Part shown: piece after piece, positions 15,546 to 35,023 of the stretch | How the letters are laid out: every line of letters begins with the position of its first letter | How positions within the stretch are numbered: position 1 is the first letter of the stretch | Virus record (IMG/VR): IMGVR_UViG_3300025364_000003 | Span: 62,001-126,000 of that record | DNA: 64,000 nucleotides | Direction: 5' to 3' (one strand) | Program-made: the position numbers and the translations under genes | The notes under the pieces: generated by a model | Database searches by the model: none | The model's input: only the letters and a program-made list of their open reading frames with translations | Told to the model about the DNA's origin: nothing

Positions 15546-15666
15546 TTGATTTAGGCTCCTACCCGGCATTGCAGCACGAACCAAGTCGACATTGGTTCTC
15601 GGGATCTTCTGTGAGCAATTTCCCAATGGGAACACAGATGTTCTCTGCTTGAACTATAAGAGCTAG

Positions 15667-15739
15667 TGACCCCAACGGGATTCGAACCCGTATTAACAGC
15701 GTGAAAGGCTGCTGTCCTGAACCGTTAGACGATGGGGCC
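15667..15739 (-). tRNA. trnE: tRNA-Glu(UUC)
   Basis: GGCCCCA/TGGGGTC acceptor stem, GCAGC-CTTTCAC-GCTGT anticodon arm, GGTTCGAATCC T-arm; followed by CTA, not CCA. Confidence 0.95.
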
Positions 15740-15902
15740 AAGCGTGTAGAAGTTGCGACCCACAGAGTCTACACCCTCTGTGCATGTCCAGCAGTGTCGG
15801 TGGTGGCCATTTGTAGTGCGGGCCTGTTAGGAGGCAACCGCCGGGGGACATTATTAGTTTAGCAGGAATTAGCTTGAATATGAACCCCATTGGGGAATTT
15901 AG

Positions 15903-16301
15903 TTATTCTCGGTTGTCTTTACAGCGATGACAATCATCACAAAGGGGTTGAATGTTGTCAACAGTGTTGGAACCGCCATCACTCATCGAGTGGATGTGAT
16001 CAAGTTGTAAATTGAGATCAAATGTTCTGCAATAGCTGCATTTATGCTTGTAATCAAGCAAAATCTGGGCCCAGGCCCGAGATTGCAGTCTGCCAGGCAG
16101 TTTTCTCTTTTTTGCTCGTCTGTTGTGCCGATGAGTTCTTCGTTGGCTGTCAGCAAAACAATCGTAACAAATTTTGTATTGTCGTTTGTTTGCGACGCAT
16201 TGCTGATCAATGGTATGTCCTCTGTTTTGTTTTAGGCAACAAAGCGCACAGTGCACCTTTGTCGTGTTGAGCACAACAATGGGAGGAGCTGACAGTGACA
16301 T
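15903..16301 (-). CDS. HNH endonuclease with N-terminal Cys motif, inside the tRNA cluster
   Basis: CSYC...LDHIHSMSDGGSNTVDNIQPLCDDCH. Confidence 0.9.
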   Translation of the reverse strand: MSLSAPPIVVLNTTKVHCALCCLKQNRGHTIDQQCVANKRQYKICYDCFADSQRRTHRHNRRAKKRKLPGRLQSRAWAQILLDYKHKCSYCRTFDLNLQLDHIHSMSDGGSNTVDNIQPLCDDCHRCKDNRE

Positions 16302-16335
16302 AACTTTATCAATTTACTGTAAAATGCTTCGCTTA

Positions 16336-16419
16336 TAGGGCCGGTGGGACTCGAACCCACAAGGGCTTGCGCCCGAGAGATTTTAAGTCTCCTCTGTATG
16401 CCAATTCCAGCACGGCCCC
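16336..16419 (-). tRNA. trnL: tRNA-Leu(UAA)
   Basis: Anticodon loop CTTAAAA, long variable arm GGGCGCAAGCCC, GGTTCGAGTCC T-arm; no encoded CCA. Confidence 0.95.
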
Positions 16420-16502
16420 GTGAAATGTTTAACTATAGGTCACCCAAAGTCCCTGCATCCACTTTGAAAAAATGGTGACTAAAATCTTACTCATATCATT
16501 GA

Positions 16503-16575
16503 TGGGTCCAGAGGGAATCGAACCCCCAACCGTCGGGTTAAAAGCCCGCTGCTCTGCCGATTGAGCTATGGACCC
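16503..16575 (-). tRNA. trnK: tRNA-Lys(UUU)
   Basis: GGGTCCA/TGGACCC acceptor stem, loop CTTTTAA, GGTTCGATTCC T-arm; no encoded CCA. Confidence 0.95.
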
Positions 16576-16659
16576 AATACCAGGTTCTCCCACCATTGGG
16601 ACATTGCCTGGCTAGAACATCTCTATGTTAGCATGCCCGAGCCCAAGTTTGAACCGATT

Positions 16660-18105: not shown

Positions 18106-18804
18106 TCACTCTCCAATGGAGAAACGCAAGCGCAAGACCCTCTCTTCTCTCGGAGAAAGAGTGCGAAGCAACTGTTTTACGATATTGGCCTGAGACTCAG
18201 ACTCCAACTGCTCCTGGGCAGATGAAACCTCGGTATCTTCGATAAAATCGCCAAGAGAAGCATCCCCCTCTTCTCCAATGCTCATATCAAGCGACAGAGG
18301 ATTTTTGATATATTCAAAAATTCGTACGACCTTATCTTTCGGCAGCTCCAAGAAAGCGGAGAGTTCTTCTGGAGAAGGTTCGGAGCCGTTGACCTCCATC
18401 ATGAGCCGAATGGCCTTACGGAGTCGGCCAATGGTTTCCTGCATATGCACAGGAATACGAATGGTGCGAGCTTTATCTTGAAGGGCTCGACCAATCGCCT
18501 GACGAATCCAGTGGGTTGCGTAAGTAGAAAAACGGAATCCCTTGGTGTGATCGAACTTCTCTACTGCTCGCATGAGCCCGATGTTACCCTCCTGAATGAG
18601 GGCCATGAAGTCCATGCCTCGACCACGGTAGCGCTTTGCAATAGAAATAACCAGACGAAGATTCGACTCGACCATTTCGTTTCGAGCACGATCACCGTCT
18701 GGTCCACCTTTGAGTACCCGCTTGGCGAGCATAACCTCGCCCTCTCGGGTGAGAAGGTTGTCCTTCATTTTGTTGATATACACGCTTGTGGTAGTTTTGG
18801 TCAT
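18106..18804 (-). CDS. RpoD-derived sigma factor A, ending before region 4.2
   Basis: Regions 1.2 (LLTREGEV), 2 ([40 protein letters not shown]), 3 ([18 protein letters not shown]) and 4.1 ([13 protein letters not shown]), then IGE-stop. Confidence 0.92.
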
Positions 18805-18964: not shown

Positions 18965-19150
18965 TCAGCCCCACCCCAGTTCACGGTCACGACGAATCAT
19001 CCGAGCGATATATTCCTCTTCCTTGGCAGTTCCTTGAAGCAAGCTCGGAAAGACAGGCTTGAGTCGCTGACTCAAGCACCGCTCGGTCGTAGTCTTCTCC
19101 AGAGTAGTCTGCCCGACTCGAAATTCGACCCGCTCGTTACCGTCAGCCAT
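18965..19150 (-). CDS. Small hypothetical protein
   Basis: 61-aa ORF overlapping the HNH stop, GGAGG SD. Confidence 0.6.
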   Translation of the reverse strand: MADGNERVEFRVGQTTLEKTTTERCLSQRLKPVFPSLLQGTAKEEEYIARMIRRDRELGWG

Positions 19151-19559
19151 TGTTGCCTCCCATTTCCTTCAATACTAGCATGAAGTCGTCCGGGAGTGAA
19201 CCGATTAGGATCATTTTCGAGACTTCTCGCTGTAGCTGAATCAGCCTCTCAGCCTCAGGAAGATTTTCGCCCTTCTTGCACAGCTCGATTGCTTGTCCAA
19301 TCGAAATCCTGGTCTCATGGAGGATCTTCCTCCGCAAAACCATATCGAGTTGAGCAGGCGTCGGGTTACTGTCGCCCTTCGTCTTGTTGCAAGGCAAACA
19401 AGAGATAACAAGGTTCCACGCCCGGTGAGGACCACCCTTGGACTTGGGGATCACGTGGTCCACCGTCTTGGAGTCCCAAGTCAGAGACTCCCCACAGTAG
19501 AAACAACGTCCCTTGTCTCGCTTCCAGAGCGTGCGCTTGACCTTTAGTGAGGCCGACAC
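19143..19559 (-). CDS. HNH endonuclease
   Basis: CFYCG...TVDHVIPKSKGG...NLVISCLPCNKTKG. Confidence 0.92.
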   Translation of the reverse strand: MSASLKVKRTLWKRDKGRCFYCGESLTWDSKTVDHVIPKSKGGPHRAWNLVISCLPCNKTKGDSNPTPAQLDMVLRRKILHETRISIGQAIELCKKGENLPEAERLIQLQREVSKMILIGSLPDDFMLVLKEMGGNNG

Positions 19560-19573
19560 TTTCTTTCCTCGGT

Positions 19574-19915
19574 TTAGCTGTTTGGATCGAAACCAGCGTG
19601 ATAGATGTGATAGATCACATCCTCCCGCTGAGGAACGCTCAGTACAGAGTCATTATCCCAATGGATATGCCCCTGACAATCCTGTGAATTGCTCTTCACT
19701 GCCTCGTACCACTCGTCATCGTCCATCTGGACCAGGGTCCCAGGAAGAGCCTCGATATTATCATAAAACGGCACGACAGAATCGAGACTCGACCACCAGG
19801 CTACTAGCTCAGACTCCGACATCCCGGTGTCCCACCGCCAGTAACGGTAACCGTATTCCTCCTCTAGCCAGACGATAACGGTGTTGTTCATGTTTTCCTC
19901 AGCAGTCACGGGCAA
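19574..19915 (-). CDS. Hypothetical protein (acidic, aromatic-rich)
   Basis: 113-aa ORF in the operon. Confidence 0.7.
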   Translation of the reverse strand: MPVTAEENMNNTVIVWLEEEYGYRYWRWDTGMSESELVAWWSSLDSVVPFYDNIEALPGTLVQMDDDEWYEAVKSNSQDCQGHIHWDNDSVLSVPQREDVIYHIYHAGFDPNS

Positions 19916-20174
19916 TTTTCATATCGATCTCGCCGATGAGATCGTGCATCTCTTCCAGCTCTTCCAGGGTACAGAACAGGTTAAACCCCGAGCGGTAACG
20001 GAGCTCCTGAAAACGGAGCGAGTGCTCCGTTTGGATACGAACCATTCGGAGCGGCTGTCCCTTATTGATCCCGGAGGTCATCGTGCCAACATGGCACACC
20101 GTCGAGGTGTTGCCGTAGTCGTACGACTCCGGAGCATCGGTAAAGCGGATGAAAACCTTGTCTTCGTTGTTCAT
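19899..20174 (-). CDS. Hypothetical protein (leaderless)
   Basis: GG-TTCATT-17-TATATT-6-ATG promoter. Confidence 0.75.
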   Translation of the reverse strand: MNNEDKVFIRFTDAPESYDYGNTSTVCHVGTMTSGINKGQPLRMVRIQTEHSLRFQELRYRSGFNLFCTLEELEEMHDLIGEIDMKIARDC

Positions 20175-20188
20175 GTTCTGAATATACC

Positions 20189-20362
20189 TTATTCGGAGTT
20201 AGAAATGAACCGAATATGAATTTTGTCGTAGGCTTTCTTGGCCTGCTTCAGGGTGGTGACAATTCCCTCCCTGGCTTGAGTGGCAACAATCACCCTGCTG
20301 AAGAGTTCCCGACGTTTGATCGGATCCTTGAGGATCTCACGGATATTGACTCGCTGCCTCAT
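20189..20362 (-). CDS. Small hypothetical protein
   Basis: ATGA overlap with the upstream stop at 20359-20361. Confidence 0.6.
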   Translation of the reverse strand: MRQRVNIREILKDPIKRRELFSRVIVATQAREGIVTTLKQAKKAYDKIHIRFISNSE

Positions 20363-20604
20363 CGGCCACCCTGACGAGCGGTCCATTCTGCCTCGAACGC
20401 TTCCTCGGCCCGTTCGCCCACGTCCACAGCTACATCCCAAACCCAATGACCTGGATCGTCGAGCCAGTGATCGCAATCGAAGTGCCAAGCGGCATTCTCT
20501 GCAAGGCGGGTACAGTTGACCTCACCACCCTGCCAAAGGTCCGGGTGACTATGGTCGGAAAGTTGTTCCCGCATGAATTGGCGGACTTGTGTCTTGACGA
20601 ACAT
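20359..20604 (-). CDS. Small acidic protein
   Basis: GEVNCTRLAENAAWHFD..WLDDPGHWVWDVA; AAGGAG SD. Confidence 0.7.
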   Translation of the reverse strand: MFVKTQVRQFMREQLSDHSHPDLWQGGEVNCTRLAENAAWHFDCDHWLDDPGHWVWDVAVDVGERAEEAFEAEWTARQGGR

Positions 20605-20616
20605 TATTGCTCTTTC

Positions 20617-20808
20617 TCAGTAAATCTTGACCCAGCCAGCCTTTAGAGCCGGCTGTAGCTGAACGCCGTTAACCGGATGACGGTGGCCCTCGTTGAGGAG
20701 CACGAAATAATTTCCCTCGTGGTCCTTGACCAGGGACTGATTAACGTCACTGCTAACGTGCTTACCGTTTCGGTAGTAATGAACCTCGACGTAACGTACG
20801 TGCTCCAT
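20617..20808 (-). CDS. Small hypothetical protein (leaderless)
   Basis: GG-TTCACA-17-TAATAT-7-ATG places the start at 20808. Confidence 0.65.
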   Translation of the reverse strand: MEHVRYVEVHYYRNGKHVSSDVNQSLVKDHEGNYFVLLNEGHRHPVNGVQLQPALKAGWVKIY

Positions 20809-20966
20809 GGTTCCCATATTAGTAAATAAGTCATCAGGTGTGAACCGAATATGGATTTTATCCATGAATCAGACCCATATAGAAAAATACTGTTGTCCCC
20901 ATTTGGTGACCGGCCTTTTTATTTAATTCGGTGCAAACTGAGGAAAGCCCGTGATAACTTAGAATC

Positions 20967-21482
20967 ACGGACGCACTTGTAGAAAAGGCTCGTCGATTCG
21001 CCCTGGAACATCATGGGGACCAGAGATATGGTGAACATCCGTACAGTCCCCATCTGGGGGAGGTGGCTGATTTGGCTCGGCCCTGGGGTCCGGTAGCGGA
21101 AGCGGTTGCCTGGCTTCACGATGTGGTCGAGGATACGGACGTGTCGAGCTACGACGTGTTCATGTCTTTCGGGGATCCTGTGGCGTCCTGTGTCTGGATC
21201 GTTACGGATCCAGGCGGTAGGAACCGCAAGGAAAAGAAGCTCCGACTTCACGAGAGACTCAAAGAAATCGTAGCCAACGATGCTAAGGGTTATGTTCAGT
21301 ACCGTCCAGCCCTCCTTGTCAAGGTCTGTGACCGCCTGGCTAACCTACGAGCAGGCAAGGCCGGCAATCCAGGGCTCCTGAAGATGTACCGTAAGGAGCA
21401 TACTGCGTTCAAGGATGCAGCATATGTGCCAGGTCTCTGCGATCGGCTTTGGAACGAAATCGAAGAAATCCTAGCCGATTAA
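20967..21482 (+). CDS. HD-domain small alarmone hydrolase-like protein (SpoT/Mesh1 type) with ACG at the start position
   Basis: KARRFALEHH..QRYG..PY..HL..V, LHDVVEDT, LLVKVCDRLAN; frame open from 20958 with ACG exactly 6 nt after the promoter -10. Confidence 0.85.
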   Translation, partial: TDALVEKARRFALEHHGDQRYGEHPYSPHLGEVADLARPWGPVAEAVAWLHDVVEDTDVSSYDVFMSFGDPVASCVWIVTDPGGRNRKEKKLRLHERLKEIVANDAKGYVQYRPALLVKVCDRLANLRAGKAGNPGLLKMYRKEHTAFKDAAYVPGLCDRLWNEIEEILAD

Positions 21483-21528
21483 CAGAAATAGGTTCAAACC
21501 TAGTCTAGGGCATGGTATATTCATAAGC

Positions 21529-22119
21529 ATGAAGGTACACGTCAACAGCTTCGTCAAGCGTCAGACCCCGGAGTCGGAGTTTTCTCATTTCGAGGGACCT
21601 CCAGGTTGTGAGGACGTCTGGGAAAACCTCCGTGTTTCGATCGAGCTAATGATCGAGCAGGATCATGGCATCGAACCCGGTTACCGGGATGGCGTGATTC
21701 TCGTTCACGTGAACCCCCAGCATTTCTTTTCTGGCGTGGTTCAGCTCAAGGAGGGTGACCACCTTGTGGGAGAGTTCAAGGCCCGTCGACCCGGCGAGTC
21801 TCCTCGGAAGTCGATCGGCGTGGTTGGTGCAGAAAAGATGCCCGCCAAGACCGCTTTCGTGGTTCTCTACGCTTCCACCGTGCTTGCGGAGGGTGGAGAT
21901 AACGAGCTTCCGGCCGAGGAAGGGAATTGGGAGATCATTTCCTTGAATGCCAGTCCGGTCGAGGGTGAAATGCCCATCAGTCCGATGGTGCTTCTTCACA
22001 ACCACTTCGGTAGCGACGGTGGCACCAGTACCAACCTAAGCGATTCTGAGCTGGTCGCCATGCTCCGTGAGTCTTTCGAGTTCTGGAAGGACAAGGCAAT
22101 GGTAGCCCCGAAGGGTTGA
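21529..22119 (+). CDS. DUF3228-like protein (leaderless)
   Basis: F..RQ, GYRDG, VVLY, WEIISLNA, E.P..P...HN.FG..GG, FEFW..KA pattern. Confidence 0.65.
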   Translation: MKVHVNSFVKRQTPESEFSHFEGPPGCEDVWENLRVSIELMIEQDHGIEPGYRDGVILVHVNPQHFFSGVVQLKEGDHLVGEFKARRPGESPRKSIGVVGAEKMPAKTAFVVLYASTVLAEGGDNELPAEEGNWEIISLNASPVEGEMPISPMVLLHNHFGSDGGTSTNLSDSELVAMLRESFEFWKDKAMVAPKG

Positions 22120-22337
22120 ACATGTCCCAAAAAAGCCCCGAATATCGAAATGGATACGGAGACGCAAAAGCTGATCTCCTACGGCTAGTCAAGGAGGCTC
22201 TCAAGAGCCTCCATGAGGCTTGCCAAAATAATGGCTTCTGCGACCCCTCCGAAAAAGATAAGGAGCTTCTGAGGCTCCGTGAGGCCGAGCTACGCCGCAT
22301 TAGGGGCATGATCAAGGCATTAAAGCCAAAAGAGTGA
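22116..22337 (+). CDS. Small helical protein
   Basis: TTGA overlap; EYRNGY motif. Confidence 0.65.
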   Translation: MNMSQKSPEYRNGYGDAKADLLRLVKEALKSLHEACQNNGFCDPSEKDKELLRLREAELRRIRGMIKALKPKE

Positions 22338-22379
22338 ATTCTCTTTACCTGGGAAACCGGAAAAGGTAAGTTGTAGCAC

Positions 22380-23153
22380 ATGAGTATCCCGAATCGTCCG
22401 TTTGGTGTCGAACTTGAGTTCAACAGTGCACCTCCACCGGAAGTGCTGGCGTGGCTTCTCAGAGATAAGGGCATCAAGGCTCATGATGACGCCGTTGCCC
22501 GTGATCATTCGTTTTGGCTCGTGCATGATGATGCCTCTATCACTGGACCTGGGGTGCATATTGAGGTTTCTTCCCCGATCCTCCGAGGAAAGAAAGGTTT
22601 GGCCGAGGTTCGTTCAGTCTGTCGTTTTCTCACCAAGTTGGGCTGTAAGACGAATTCGTCTTGTGGGCTTCATGTCCACGTGAGTGATAGCAGAATCACC
22701 AATTCGACTCTGATAAACATTCTCAAGCGCTATGCAGAAAATGAAGAATTGATCGACTCTTGGATGACAAAGAGTCGTCGTGGAAACCGAAACCCATTTT
22801 GTCGTTCTCACAAGAGGGACTGGAAAGATATGGTTGCATGTCTTTCCGACAAGGAAGAGAATCTTAGATTGCGTTTTGGTGAACGTTTTGAGGTTTCTTC
22901 TACTGTTGGTGGTGATAAGATCAACTTCGATTCCAATTACGCCACCCTGGAATTCCGTCACCATCATGGGACACTCAACTCCACAGAAGTCTCCAATTGG
23001 GTACAATTCTGCCTAAACTTCGTGGAGGTTTCTGCCGATCTCACCCCTGGAACCCGACGAGCAACCAAGCGCACCAGGGACACTGGACCTCTGATGGGTT
23101 TGTCCACAAATATTCGGAATCATTTCACTTACCAGGCCGAGCGTCTTCGCTAA
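22380..23153 (+). CDS. Putative amidoligase (Amidoligase_2 family)
   Basis: FGVELE, D.SI, EVSSPIL, NSSCGLHVHV, TLEFRHHHGTLN motifs. Confidence 0.88.
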   Translation: MSIPNRPFGVELEFNSAPPPEVLAWLLRDKGIKAHDDAVARDHSFWLVHDDASITGPGVHIEVSSPILRGKKGLAEVRSVCRFLTKLGCKTNSSCGLHVHVSDSRITNSTLINILKRYAENEELIDSWMTKSRRGNRNPFCRSHKRDWKDMVACLSDKEENLRLRFGERFEVSSTVGGDKINFDSNYATLEFRHHHGTLNSTEVSNWVQFCLNFVEVSADLTPGTRRATKRTRDTGPLMGLSTNIRNHFTYQAERLR

Positions 23154-23206
23154 CGAATAACAGTTATTTGGTGTAAATCTTAGAACGTCTATAATAGGAT
23201 AATAAC

Positions 23207-23452
23207 ATGCTCATCAAGCTCAAAGACCGCAACGGAACCATCCCGGACTTCGATCGCCAGCTCGGGGAGGCTCGATACTGTCTGCCGGACATGGAAATGT
23301 ATCACCGAGCCTGTCTCGTCCTGTACGACACCGAGGCCAACAAGTTCACCCTGTTCACCCGTGATCTGGTCACTTCGGAGTACATGGTGACTCAGGTGGA
23401 GGGAACCCGTCGGGGCTTGCAGTACAAAAAGTTCTGGGAAAAAGCTTCGTAA
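23207..23452 (+). CDS. Small hypothetical protein (leaderless)
   Basis: GG-TGTAAA-17-TAGGAT-6-ATG. Confidence 0.7.
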   Translation: MLIKLKDRNGTIPDFDRQLGEARYCLPDMEMYHRACLVLYDTEANKFTLFTRDLVTSEYMVTQVEGTRRGLQYKKFWEKAS

Positions 23453-23491
23453 TAGGTTCACAACCAGGCTTTGGCCTGATATATTAAGACC

Positions 23492-23656
23492 ATGGCCAAG
23501 CGAAACAAGAAGAACGTCTCGGACGTGAAGCGACGCAGTGCCGCTGCCGTGGCCGCTATCCTCAAGACTGGTGCTGGTAAGCACGGGGACCGTCGCTTGA
23601 AGCGGATGAAGACCCGTGCGGCCCAGAAGCGGGCTGCCTTCCGAGACTGGAGGTGA
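23492..23656 (+). CDS. Very basic 54-aa protein (MAKRNKK...GAGKHGDRRLKR...)
   Basis: Below the ORF-track cutoff; leaderless GG-TTCACA-17-TATATT-6-ATG promoter; stop overlaps the next start. Confidence 0.75.
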   Translation: MAKRNKKNVSDVKRRSAAAVAAILKTGAGKHGDRRLKRMKTRAAQKRAAFRDWR

Positions 23657-23853
23657 GCATTACTGAACGGGAAGAAGAAGCCTTCAAGAAGGGCTACGAG
23701 CGCTGTCGGCTGGATATGGCCCGAGAGCTGGGTCAACTCATTGCGTATTACTACAACAAAGGTCAGACCAATGGTGGTGATGCGCTCCGTCATGCTAGCA
23801 CCGTGCTGCGAGCTGTGAAGCCTGGACAGAAGCCTTGGAATCCAGATATTTGA
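23653..23853 (+). CDS. Small helical protein
   Basis: GTGA overlap; FKKGYE motif. Confidence 0.65.
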   Translation: MSITEREEEAFKKGYERCRLDMARELGQLIAYYYNKGQTNGGDALRHASTVLRAVKPGQKPWNPDI

Positions 23854-23879
23854 ACCGATTAATAATCGGTTCAAATATC
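23845..23879. repeat. Perfect 16-bp inverted repeat containing back-to-back GGTTCAAA elements
   Basis: GATATTTGAACCGATT-AAT-AATCGGTTCAAATATC. Confidence 0.9.
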
Positions 23880-23907
23880 GAGAAATTCGGGATAAGCTAA
23901 ATTTAAG

Positions 23908-24243
23908 ATGACCAAGCCCACCTTGATATTCTACACCACGTTCAAGAACGTTCCTTATTCCGATGAGGAGTGGGAGCGTGCCAATAAGTGGCGTGCCAAA
24001 TTGGCCCAGGACAATCCGACCTGGGCTGAGAAGCACCCCGAAGACGTAGAGCCGCTGAAAACCCGTCCCGTTCATTCGTTCAGATATGGTCACGCATGTT
24101 TCTCTCACGAGGAAGCCCGTAAGGTCTGTGAGCAAGCCTTGGAAAGTGGTGTCCAGATGGTGACCTACTCAGCTTGGGACAGTAATAAGCAGGTAGGGGA
24201 GTGGTCTAGGCGTCAGGGTGGACATTGGTACCAGAGTAAATAA
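23908..24243 (+). CDS. Hypothetical protein
   Basis: 111-aa ORF downstream of the promoter at 23870. Confidence 0.75.
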   Translation: MTKPTLIFYTTFKNVPYSDEEWERANKWRAKLAQDNPTWAEKHPEDVEPLKTRPVHSFRYGHACFSHEEARKVCEQALESGVQMVTYSAWDSNKQVGEWSRRQGGHWYQSK

Positions 24244-27184: not shown

Positions 27185-27257
27185 GGGGTCGTAGCTCAAT
27201 TGGGAGAGCACCTGTTTTGCACGCAGGGGGTTGAGGGTTCAAGTCCCTCCGATTCCA
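27185..27257 (+). tRNA. trnA: tRNA-Ala(UGC)
   Basis: GGGGTCG/CGATTCC acceptor stem with G3:U70, loop TTTGCAC, GGTTCAAGTCC T-arm; no encoded CCA. Confidence 0.95.
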
Positions 27258-34303: not shown

Positions 34304-35023
34304 ATGCCGATGACGAAGACCGCTACCGACGCCTACCTCGCTCTCCTCACCGCTGACCTCCTCACCCGTGAGGATGAGGTCGCCCTCGCTGCCATCGCCC
34401 AGGACACCGAACACCCCGAGTCCGAGAAGGCTCGTCAGGCCATGATCGAGGCCAACCTCCGGCTGGTGGTCCACGTGGCGAAGAAGTACCGTGGCCGTGC
34501 TTCCAAGCTCGGCGTGTCTTACATCGATCTCATTCAAGAGGGTAACATCGGTCTCATGACCGCTGTCGAGAAGTTCGATGGTGACCGTGGGCACCGCTTC
34601 TCCACCTATGCCGTTCACTGGATCCGTCAGTCCATCGGTCGTGCCCTCCAGAACAAGGCGAGCACGATCCGGGTCCCGGTTCACGTCCACGAGGTCGTGG
34701 GCAAGCTCAAGTCCGCCGCTCGGCTCATCGGTGAGATGAACGGTGAGGGTCCGACCCCGGCTGAGGTCGCTTCCTTTCTGGAGCTTCCCGAGGACAAGGT
34801 TACTCGCCTGTGGCAGTACGTCCGCCCCTGCGATTCCCTCGATCGTCAGGTGGGTTCCGAGGATGGTGACTCCGTGCTCGGTGACTTCGTGGAGGACACC
34901 GGCAACAGCCTGACCGATGCGGTCGACGATGCCGCTTCCAAGTCGCTCGTGCACACCGTGCTCCGCACCCTGACTCCCCGTGAGGAAAAGGTGCTCAAGC
35001 TCCGGTTCGCCGTCGGCGCCTGA
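34304..35023 (+). CDS. RpoD-derived sigma factor B, ending before region 4.2
   Basis: [71 protein letters not shown] then AVGA-TGA-TAG; GG-TTCATA-17-TAATAT-6-ATG promoter. Confidence 0.92.

What the first reader, a model, noticed from the sequence alone, without database searches (positions are those of the whole stretch)
20930..21482. Alarmone-hydrolase gene has ACG exactly where the leaderless ATG should be
Seen: the ORF track starts at GTG 21063, but the frame is open from 20958 and encodes the essential N-terminal HD-hydrolase helices (KARRFALEHHGDQRYGEHPYSPHL). The promoter GG-TGCAAA-17-TAACTT-AGAATC is followed by ACG at 20967, the same geometry as ~23 ATG starts. Known: SpoT/Mesh1-type HD domains hydrolyse (p)ppGpp/(p)ppApp, and leaderless initiation strongly prefers AUG. 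Inference: this is a silencing or attenuating start mutation, a rare ACG start, or a sequence error.
Basis: partly seen in the sequence, partly recalled or inferred. Interest (0 to 1): 0.6.

Follow-up and report, generated by a model that had tools for sequence, protein, structure and literature searches.

The report
Start-codon loss in phage alarmone hydrolase
In the main strain of a roughly 461-kb phage from a hypersaline lake, a gene for a small alarmone ((p)ppGpp-type) hydrolase has a real T-to-C change that turns its ATG start into ACG at the very 5' end of a leaderless message, which most likely silences or strongly weakens an otherwise intact gene.

Summary
The frame is open from 20958 to 21482. 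ACG at 20967 lies 6 nt after a -10 box (TAACTT), in the register used by 16 strict leaderless ATG genes in the same 35-kb island.

Relatives with the same promoter (L005-L007, L008, L116, L118, and a 92%-identical contig) all have ATG at that codon. Of 109 full-length homologues, none starts at the GTG or TTG that gene callers chose.

ACG is not a sequencing error. It stands in every assembly of this strain (six loci 100% identical over 4-6.5 kb, 19 contig records, five lake runs at depth about 20). It is a derived change: the closest relative and a minor strain in the same lake both carry ATG.

The ORF shows no decay. It keeps 41 of 43 conserved columns, the H..HD..ED..D motif, and folds as a Mesh1/SAH domain (pLDDT 94).

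The minor strain keeps ATG but has lost the 3' half of the gene to an inserted promoter-plus-ORF cassette, so the gene appears dispensable in this lake.

Best reading: a recent null or hypomorphic start-loss allele. A weak functional ACG start, or a truncated product from SD+TTG 21072, cannot be excluded without RNA or protein data. This is ordinary biology and well documented here.

The parts
20930..20937 (+). -35-like box GGTGCAAA. It is a one-mismatch variant of the island consensus GGTTCAAA and is conserved as GGTG(C/T)A in orthologous loci.
20955..20960 (+). -10 box TAACTT, preceded by TGA (extended -10-like). It lies 19 nt after GGTGCA, and 6 nt (AGAATC) separate it from the start-equivalent codon.
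20967..20969 (+). ACG at the position of the leaderless ATG. T-to-C at 20968 is the derived change. The inferred transcription start is A20967 (inferred, not mapped).
20967..21482 (+). Full-length small alarmone hydrolase (SAH, HD_4 / RelA-SpoT hydrolase type) reading frame of 171 codons plus TAA. Numbering from ACG = 1, the motif residues are H16, H29 (21051-53), H51-D52 (21117-22), E55-D56 (21129-34) and D122 (21330-32). All are intact.
21059..21074 (+). Internal Shine-Dalgarno-like GGAGGTG (21059-65), with GTG 21063 (139-aa call) and, 6 nt further on, TTG 21072 (136-aa call). Products from either start would lack helix 1, the hairpin, most of helix 2 and the metal ligand H29.
20806..20846 (-). 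Divergent neighbour: GGTTCA-N19-TAATAT-N7-ATG (ATG at 20808). The promoter defines a leaderless 63-aa gene, where callers extend it to 82 aa.
21491..21531 (+). Promoter and leaderless ATG (21529) of the next gene (DUF3228-like, 196 aa). It shows the canonical island geometry immediately downstream.

Best explanation
**What the gene is.** It encodes a single-domain small alarmone hydrolase (SAH) of the RelA/SpoT hydrolase (HD_4, Mesh1-like) type. It sits in a 35-kb high-GC island of a roughly 461-kb phage from a hypersaline lake.

**How it is normally expressed.** In this island many genes are expressed from a phage-type promoter (GGTTCA-N19-TAnnnT). The promoter places the transcript's 5' end on the A of an ATG, giving a leaderless mRNA.

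**What changed.** In the dominant lake strain a single T-to-C transition at 20968 turned that 5'-terminal ATG into ACG. Leaderless initiation depends very strongly on a 5' AUG. The full-length enzyme is therefore most likely no longer made, or made only at a tiny fraction of the ancestral level. This makes the allele a recent null or strong hypomorph in a gene that is otherwise intact.

**Why the loss is tolerated.** The gene appears dispensable, or possibly counter-selected, in this habitat. A co-occurring sister strain kept the ATG but lost the 3' half of the same gene to a promoter-plus-ORF cassette.

**Shown:** the ACG is real; it is derived; orthologues have ATG in the same promoter register; the ORF and catalytic motifs are intact; there is a second, independent lesion in a sister strain.

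**Inferred:** the transcription start at A20967; the loss or reduction of translation; the dispensability of the gene.
For: 1. **Real.** Six loci from IMG/VR, JGI, ENA and Logan assemblies are 100% identical to the window over 4.3-6.5 kb, including the ACG. Contigs in runs X1 and X3 cover it at word depth 20.6 and 17.5 with no differences. The protein cluster holds only 136- and 139-aa calls, from 19 contig records, with no 171-aa member.
2. **Derived.** A 741-nt microbial-mat contig, 92.4% identical, has C>T at 20968, which restores ATG. The minor lake strain L116 and the loose end in X3 read ...TAGAATCATGGACGCAC. L005-L007, L008 and L118 all have ATG 6-7 nt after a -10 box in the same promoter register.
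3. **The N-terminus is needed.** Twelve of the 43 columns conserved at 85% or more lie upstream of the TTG. They include H16, Y21, H29 and V33, which are invariant in all 109 homologues. H29 aligns with the first metal-binding His of Rel hydrolase domains. The GTG and TTG starts fall inside helix 2 of a pLDDT-94 model.
4. **Leaderless starts here are strictly ATG.** All 16 strict-core leaderless genes use ATG. Published reporters show that any near-cognate drastically lowers leaderless initiation (PMC8459731; review PMC9031893). Even on SD-led E. coli mRNAs, ACG falls in the class giving about 0.01-1% of AUG (bioRxiv 10.1101/063800).
5. **Independent second lesion.** In L116 homology ends after codon 81. 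A GGTTCA-N19-TATTCT-N7-ATG cassette with a 115-aa ORF replaces the rest, leaving a 100-aa stub without D122. The same variant appears as contigs of depth 3.4-4.6 in X1 and X3.
6. **No rescue found.** There is no alternative in-frame ATG, GTG or TTG between the upstream stops (20952-57) and 21063. The 206-kb record holds no paralogue and no tRNA with a CGU or Met anticodon.
Against: - The ORF shows no decay. It has no stops or frameshifts, agrees with 41 of 43 conserved columns, and its only deviations are conservative (K for R, C for A).
- On the window's own branch since the split from the 92% relative, I count about 2-4 non-synonymous and about 5-8 synonymous changes. That is fewer non-synonymous changes than on the sister branch. 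This fits a very recent mutation, but it fits a gene still under selection equally well, that is, a usable ACG start.
- The ACG allele is the dominant haplotype in all five lake runs, so it is at least not strongly deleterious.
- There are no RNA, ribosome or protein data, and the transcription start is inferred from geometry only.
- All ACG-bearing assemblies come from one clonal population in one habitat. Their runs are flagged as possible sources of the record, so they establish reality but not evolutionary persistence.
Confidence: 0.68

Rival explanations
1. ACG is a functional, weak leaderless initiation codon. The full-length hydrolase is still made at a low level that selection maintains, so this is a tuned-down allele rather than a dead one.
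For: The frame and all catalytic and conserved residues are intact, and the window's branch shows no excess of non-synonymous change. The promoter elements are unchanged relative to the 92% relative. The allele is the dominant haplotype. ACG can initiate with Met at a low level in E. coli on SD-led mRNAs (bioRxiv 10.1101/063800).
Against: Leaderless initiation is much more AUG-dependent than SD-led initiation, and near-cognates drop drastically (PMC8459731, PMC9031893). All 16 strict leaderless genes of this island use ATG. Every relative has ATG. The sister strain destroyed the gene by another route, which argues against strong selection to keep it. An intact ORF is equally expected for a recent mutation.
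Confidence: 0.15
2. The mutated transcript now acts as a leadered mRNA. The internal GGAGGTG (21059-65) with TTG 21072 (or GTG 21063) drives a 136-139-aa N-terminally truncated protein, which is inactive, dominant-negative or has a new function.
For: GGAGGTG is complementary to the conserved 3' end of 16S rRNA and lies 6 nt before the TTG. Leadered genes of the island carry purine-rich SD-like leaders. Gene callers chose these starts in all 19 contig records. The 92% relative has TTA instead of TTG at 21072-74.
Against: The product would begin inside helix 2. It would lack the invariant H16, Y21 and H29, so it could not form the metal site, and it would probably not fold. GGAGG is common in the GC-rich island (106 occurrences), so an internal SD-like string is expected by chance. 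SD use in the rest of the phage is weak (12 of 30 long ORFs). The GAG codon that creates the SD is shared with the ATG-bearing relative, and polarity of TTG versus TTA is ambiguous.
Confidence: 0.1
3. Sequencing or assembly artefact: the true base at 20968 is T.
For: None found. Only contigs could be laid, not raw reads, and contigs drop rare variants.
Against: The C is identical in JGI/IMG, ENA (MEGAHIT) and Logan assemblies from at least five runs at depth about 20. The ATG-bearing sequences are distinct haplotypes with many other differences.
Confidence: 0.02
4. Correction or bypass at RNA or decoding level: C-to-U editing of the 5' codon, an upstream start in another frame with frameshifting, or a different genetic code.
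For: None specific. ACG-to-AUG start-codon editing exists in plant organelles (own knowledge).
Against: Two in-frame stops (TGA, TAA) lie directly upstream. The only upstream ATG-ORF (20851-20982) overlaps the divergent gene's start, is in another frame, and is not conserved in orthologous loci. The 206-kb record has no unusual initiator-like tRNA. No RNA data exist. Nothing in the genome points to another code.
Confidence: 0.02

Closest known systems
Phage-encoded small alarmone hydrolases (Salmonella phage PVP-SE1 SAH of the PbcSpo subfamily; phage SSU5 SAH of the PaSpo subfamily), which neutralise toxSAS toxins (PMC7229694; PaSpo also used in PMC9712102)
   Same: It is a stand-alone RelA/SpoT-type hydrolase domain of about 170 aa, encoded by a phage with no synthetase partner in the record. 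The plausible role is the same: lowering host alarmones or countering alarmone-based defence. That role is inferred.
   Different: Its subfamily within the SAHs was not determined. The host and any cognate toxSAS are unknown. This copy has lost its ATG.
Mesh1 (3NR1, 5VXA, 3NQW) and Pseudomonas aeruginosa SAH (6YVC, 6Z3O)
   Same: They are the best structural matches to the pLDDT-94 model (TM 0.70-0.76, probability 1.00). A profile of the family hits them at E 1e-13 to 1e-16. The H..HD..ED..D motif is shared.
   Different: Sequence identity is only 24-25%. Substrate preference ((p)ppGpp, (p)ppApp, or NADPH as for Mesh1) cannot be read from sequence.
Leaderless mRNA initiation in bacteria (Caulobacter crescentus reporters, PMC8459731; review PMC9031893)
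   Same: The -10 box lies 6-7 nt before the start codon with no room for a Shine-Dalgarno sequence. There is a strict ATG preference across the island's leaderless genes.
   Different: Here the 5' codon is ACG, which PMC8459731 did not test and which is not reported as a natural leaderless start in these papers. Transcription starts are not mapped for this phage.
Start-codon-loss pseudogenes or hypomorphic alleles in microbial populations (general knowledge)
   Same: A single transition in the start codon of an otherwise intact gene is fixed in one strain while relatives keep ATG.
   Different: Because the mRNA is leaderless, there is no SD to support residual near-cognate initiation. The expected effect is therefore more severe than in a leadered gene.

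Membership tests
Small alarmone hydrolase (RelA/SpoT hydrolase domain, Pfam HD_4 PF13328) | Significant sequence match to the RelA/SpoT hydrolase domain | tested here: met
   A profile of the gene and 18 homologues hits Rel, SpoT, SAH and Mesh1 chains at E 4e-19 to 1e-13. phrog_990 'metal-dependent phosphohydrolase' matches at E 4e-31. TIGR00691 spoT_relA gives a partial match at E 7e-11. Caveat: the single sequence scores 23.4 bits on PF13328, below Pfam's cut-off of 27.2, although most homologues carry the precomputed PF13328 hit.
Small alarmone hydrolase (RelA/SpoT hydrolase domain, Pfam HD_4 PF13328) | Metal-binding H...HD...D residues plus the HDxxED motif | tested here: met
   H29, H51-D52, E55-D56 and D122 (numbered from ACG = 1) are all present. 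The window agrees with 41 of the 43 columns conserved at 85% or more among 109 homologues.
Small alarmone hydrolase (RelA/SpoT hydrolase domain, Pfam HD_4 PF13328) | All-helical Mesh1/SAH fold as a single domain of about 170-200 aa without a synthetase domain | tested here: met
   The AlphaFold2 model has pLDDT 94.4 and pTM 0.90. Its top PDB matches are Mesh1 and bacterial SAHs at TM 0.70-0.76. No RelA_SpoT synthetase domain was found in the record.
Small alarmone hydrolase (RelA/SpoT hydrolase domain, Pfam HD_4 PF13328) | Mn2+-dependent 3'-pyrophosphohydrolase activity on (p)ppGpp or (p)ppApp | not testable with these tools
   This needs an enzyme assay or a toxSAS neutralisation assay.
Leaderless gene of the island's promoter class | GGTKYA-N19-TAnnnT promoter with the start codon 6-7 nt after the -10 | tested here: met
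   GGTGCA-N19-TAACTT-N6 precedes the first codon that is homologous to the relatives' proteins. Orthologous loci L005, L008, L116 and L118 keep the same register.
Leaderless gene of the island's promoter class | 5'-terminal AUG | tested here: not met
   The codon is ACG in every assembly of this strain. All 16 strict-core leaderless genes and all orthologues have ATG.
Leaderless gene of the island's promoter class | Transcript 5' end mapped on the start codon | not testable with these tools
   No RNA run holds the stretch.
Pseudogene (decaying, non-functional gene) | Disabling lesion | tested here: met
   The canonical start codon is lost, with no alternative in-frame start before codon 33.
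Pseudogene (decaying, non-functional gene) | Signs of relaxed constraint (stops, frameshifts, loss of conserved residues, raised dN/dS on its branch) | tested here: not met
   No stops or indels are present. The window agrees with 41 of 43 conserved columns. Window-branch non-synonymous changes number about 2-4, against at least 7 on the sister branch. The counts are small, so this fits a recent event and does not exclude pseudogene status.

The most novel reading that the evidence does not exclude
ACG at the 5' end of a leaderless phage mRNA is a genuine initiation codon, used weakly or conditionally. On this reading the dominant strain of a hypersaline megaphage has tuned down, rather than lost, its alarmone hydrolase. 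It would be a natural example of non-AUG, non-GUG leaderless initiation.
Probability: 0.1. Interest if true: 0.7.

Novelty: new member of a known kind. Interest (0 to 1): 0.3.

Why it matters
Phage small alarmone hydrolases are thought to counter alarmone-based host responses and toxSAS defences. Here one phage population carries two independent lesions of the same SAH gene: start loss in the dominant strain and replacement of the 3' half in a minor strain. Relatives in microbial mats keep the gene intact. That pattern suggests the gene is conditionally useful and can be lost without cost in this lake.

The locus also offers a clean natural ATG/ACG pair on a leaderless promoter, which could be used to measure how strictly leaderless initiation needs AUG outside model organisms.

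There is a practical point as well. Gene callers mis-start many genes of this island because the genes lack Shine-Dalgarno sequences. The 136- and 139-aa database entries for this protein are annotation artefacts of the missing ATG.

Tried and rejected
**Searches that gave nothing or could not be run**
- Megablast of 19000-24000 against GenBank phages found no match.
- The Pfam PF13328 search of the phage's own record missed even the gene itself, so it says nothing about paralogues. The alignment-based search found only the one copy.
- The complete 461-kb record could not be searched because it is not held.
- No RNA run holds the stretch, so there is no evidence on expression, transcript 5' end or editing.
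- Only Logan contigs were available, not raw reads. Polymorphism at 20968 within the haplotype therefore could not be measured.
- Sixteen of the 56 substitutions of the 92% relative (after 21312) were not listed, so its 3' end could not be checked for stops.
- The DNA of the P0091 locus was unavailable.
- A pattern scan of IMG/VR for the ATG variant returned only the ACG genome.

**Readings considered and rejected**
- An upstream ORF (20851-20982) with frameshifting. It is in the wrong frame, overlaps the divergent gene's start, and is not conserved.
- ATC 20964 as the start. It would need a transcription start only 4 nt after the -10.
- Another genetic code. Nothing supports one, and two different stops lie directly upstream.
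- A phage tRNA that reads ACG as initiator. None was found.
- Co-evolution of TTG 21072 with the ACG. The polarity is ambiguous.

- Read laying was given 1,601 letters.

Full report
**Context.** The window is bases 62001-126000 of a 206.5-kb IMG/VR virus record that CheckV rates 45% complete. Identical sequence lies on contigs of 381-461 kb, so this is a phage of about 461 kb. The runs that hold it are hypersaline-lake metagenomes. Weaker matches come from microbial-mat metagenomes.

- The mechanical ORF starts at GTG 21063.
- The frame is open from 20958, just after in-frame TGA and TAA. ACG at 20967 is in frame.
- Upstream lies GGTGCA (20930-35), 19 nt, TAACTT (20955-60), then AGAATC.
- This is the register of a promoter class confined to window 2114-34297.
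- GGTTCA-N19-TANNNT-N6/7-ATG occurs 14 times against 0.00 expected. The degenerate core occurs 31 times against 1.4 expected.
- Sixteen cores have ATG 6-7 nt after the -10. The others have leaders of 20-60 nt with purine-rich stretches.
- The HD gene is the only one in which a long frame (171 codons) begins at the leaderless position with a non-canonical codon and no canonical start follows within 70 nt.
- The island consensus is GGTTCA. The HD gene carries a GGTG(C/T)A variant that its orthologues share. By a plain sigma-70 consensus scan its promoter is weaker than its two neighbours' promoters.

**What the gene is.**
- The 171-codon product matches HD_4 weakly on its own (23.4 bits against a cut-off of 27.2).
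- It has 298 homologues, mostly 160-190 aa and annotated as HD-domain or (p)ppGpp hydrolase proteins.
- A profile of 19 of these hits Rel/SpoT hydrolase domains, bacterial small alarmone hydrolases and Mesh1 at E 4e-19 to 1e-13.
- phrog_990 matches at E 4e-31.
- An AlphaFold2 model (pLDDT 94.4) is all-helical. Its best PDB matches are Mesh1 and SAHs at TM 0.70-0.76.
- The H..HD..ED..D residues are present.
- The record has no synthetase domain and no second copy.

**Where homologues start.**
- The two closest full-length homologues (74% and 72% identity, 171 aa) begin with M aligned exactly on the T encoded by ACG.
- Of 109 full-length homologues, 107 start within -22 to +5 residues of that position, and 29 start exactly on it. 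None starts near the GTG or TTG.
- Twelve of the 43 strongly conserved columns lie in the 35 residues upstream of the TTG. They include invariant H16, Y21, H29 and V33.
- H29 aligns with the first metal-binding His of Rel enzymes. The GTG and TTG starts fall inside helix 2 of the model.
- The N-terminal segment is therefore part of the enzyme's core. The 136- and 139-aa database entries are artefacts of the missing ATG.

**Orthologous loci.** Syntenic relatives have a sigma-like gene upstream on the other strand and DUF3228 and amidoligase genes downstream. They carry the same promoter register followed by ATG:
- L005-L007: GGTGTA...TAGCTT-N7-ATG.
- L008: GGTGCA...TAATAT-N6-ATG.
- L116: GGTGCA...TAGTTT-N6-ATG.
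- L118, a 52%-identical homologue: GGTTCA...TATTCT-N6-ATG. There the caller had also chosen an internal ATG.

**ACG is real and derived.**
- Six loci from JGI/IMG, ENA and Logan assemblies are 100% identical to the window over 4.3-6.5 kb.
- Contigs in two lake runs cover the region at word depth 20.6 and 17.5 with no differences.
- The protein cluster holds only truncated calls, from 19 contig records.
- These assemblies all represent one clonal population from one habitat. Their runs are flagged as possible sources of the record. They therefore exclude an error but do not show long persistence.
- A 741-nt contig from a microbial-mat run is 92.4% identical with no indels and has C>T at 20968, which restores ATG.
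- In the same lake runs a minor strain (depth 3.4-4.6) reads ...TAGAATCATGGACGCAC. It matches L116.

**Is the gene decaying?**
- I rebuilt the first 116 codons of the 92% relative from the listed differences and polarised the changes with L116, L005 and L008.
- On the window branch the derived non-synonymous changes are the start codon, H/Y-to-P at codon 28 and A-to-S at codon 74. Two more are ambiguous. The sister branch has at least seven.
- Derived synonymous changes on the window branch number about 5-8.
- Overall there are about 12 non-synonymous and about 18 synonymous differences. That corresponds to a dN/dS near 0.2 by rough site counts.
- There are no stops or indels. The two deviations at conserved columns are conservative.
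- The mutation is therefore either very recent or does not abolish selection on the protein.

**A second lesion in the sister strain.**
- In L116 the homology ends after codon 81.
- The remaining 90 codons and the intergenic spacer are replaced by a cassette with its own GGTTCA-N19-TATTCT-N7-ATG promoter and a 115-aa ORF. This ORF has no Pfam match and no homologue in the record.
- The HD stub of 100 aa lacks D122 and the C-terminal helices.
- In this lake, then, neither the dominant nor the minor strain has a normal SAH gene. This is the main reason to favour loss of function over a tuned start.

**Mechanism.**
- Leaderless initiation depends on a 5' AUG. In C. crescentus reporters every near-cognate tested dropped drastically. 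Only 4.4% of natural leaderless mRNAs there use non-AUG starts. In E. coli, suppressor tRNAs rescue non-AUG starts on leadered but not on leaderless mRNAs (PMC8459731; review PMC9031893).
- Even with a Shine-Dalgarno sequence, ACG belongs to the class giving about 0.01-1% of AUG in E. coli (bioRxiv 10.1101/063800).
- All 16 strict leaderless genes of this island use ATG.
- I infer that the full-length enzyme is absent or made in traces.
- The transcript would now carry 105 nt before an internal GGAGGTG-N6-TTG (21059-21074), so a truncated product is conceivable.
- That product would lack the metal site. GGAGG is common in this GC-rich island (106 occurrences), and SD use in the phage is weak.

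**Comparison with known systems.**
- Stand-alone phage SAHs are known. Those of Salmonella phages PVP-SE1 and SSU5 neutralise all tested toxSAS toxins, and phage SAHs have been proposed as counter-defence (PMC7229694; PMC9712102 uses PaSpo).
- This gene is a new, distant member of that kind.
- The start-codon loss is an ordinary type of mutation, made more severe by the leaderless context.

**Verdict.**
- A functional weak ACG start stands at about 0.15, a truncated product at about 0.10, and error or recoding at about 0.02 each.
- Interest is modest at 0.3.
- The surrounding island is arguably more unusual than the finding itself.

Noticed in passing
window 1000-36000: A 35-kb island with GC 0.50-0.59 sits inside a phage genome that is otherwise 0.36-0.42 GC. 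It assembles identically on contigs of 381-461 kb, so it is not an obvious chimera. All 30 promoter cores of the GGTKYA-N19-TAnnnT class lie inside it. About half drive leaderless ATG genes, many of them short ORFs on both strands.
   Followed up: partly
window 18106-18804 (-) and 34304-35023 (+): Two paralogous sigma-70-like genes (232 and 239 aa) have Pfam regions 1.2/2/3 but no region-4 hit, and too little C-terminal sequence to hold one. Yet the island's promoters have a conserved -35-like GGTTCA box. What recognises that box is unexplained.
   Followed up: partly
L116:728-1170 (replaces window 21210-21487): A minor co-occurring strain has a promoter-plus-115-aa-ORF cassette in place of the 3' half of the HD gene. 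This suggests that promoter-bounded gene cassettes are exchanged in this island. The ORF has no Pfam hit.
   Followed up: partly
window 20617-20865 (-); L118:1426-1953: Gene callers mis-start leaderless genes. The 82-aa call at 20617-20865 includes its own promoter translated as '...KIHIRF...', and the promoter-defined start is ATG 20808 (63 aa). In L118 the SAH homologue was called from an internal ATG (150 aa) although a leaderless ATG lies 25 codons upstream.
   Followed up: partly
window 15666-16576 (-) and 27185-27257 (+); G000:C1:33199-33272: The island holds four tRNA genes (Glu-TTC, Leu-TAA, Lys-TTT, Ala-TGC). Elsewhere in the record ARAGORN reports Arg-CCT, Arg-TCT, a second Ala-TGC, and an odd tRNA-like gene with a two-base anticodon loop call.
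   Followed up: no
window 36000-64000: Only 12 of 30 long ORFs in the low-GC part have even a loosely defined Shine-Dalgarno-like motif upstream. This hints at a host with weak SD dependence. The host was not identified.
   Followed up: no
window 21137-21170 (+): A terminator-like hairpin followed by a T-rich run lies inside the HD coding region. The count is no higher than in shuffled sequence, so it is probably chance.
   Followed up: no
window 21529-23153 (+): The conserved downstream neighbours are a DUF3228-like protein (196 aa), a small 71-aa ORF and an Amidoligase_2 protein (257 aa). They are syntenic in L005 and L006. Any functional link to the SAH is unknown.
   Followed up: no
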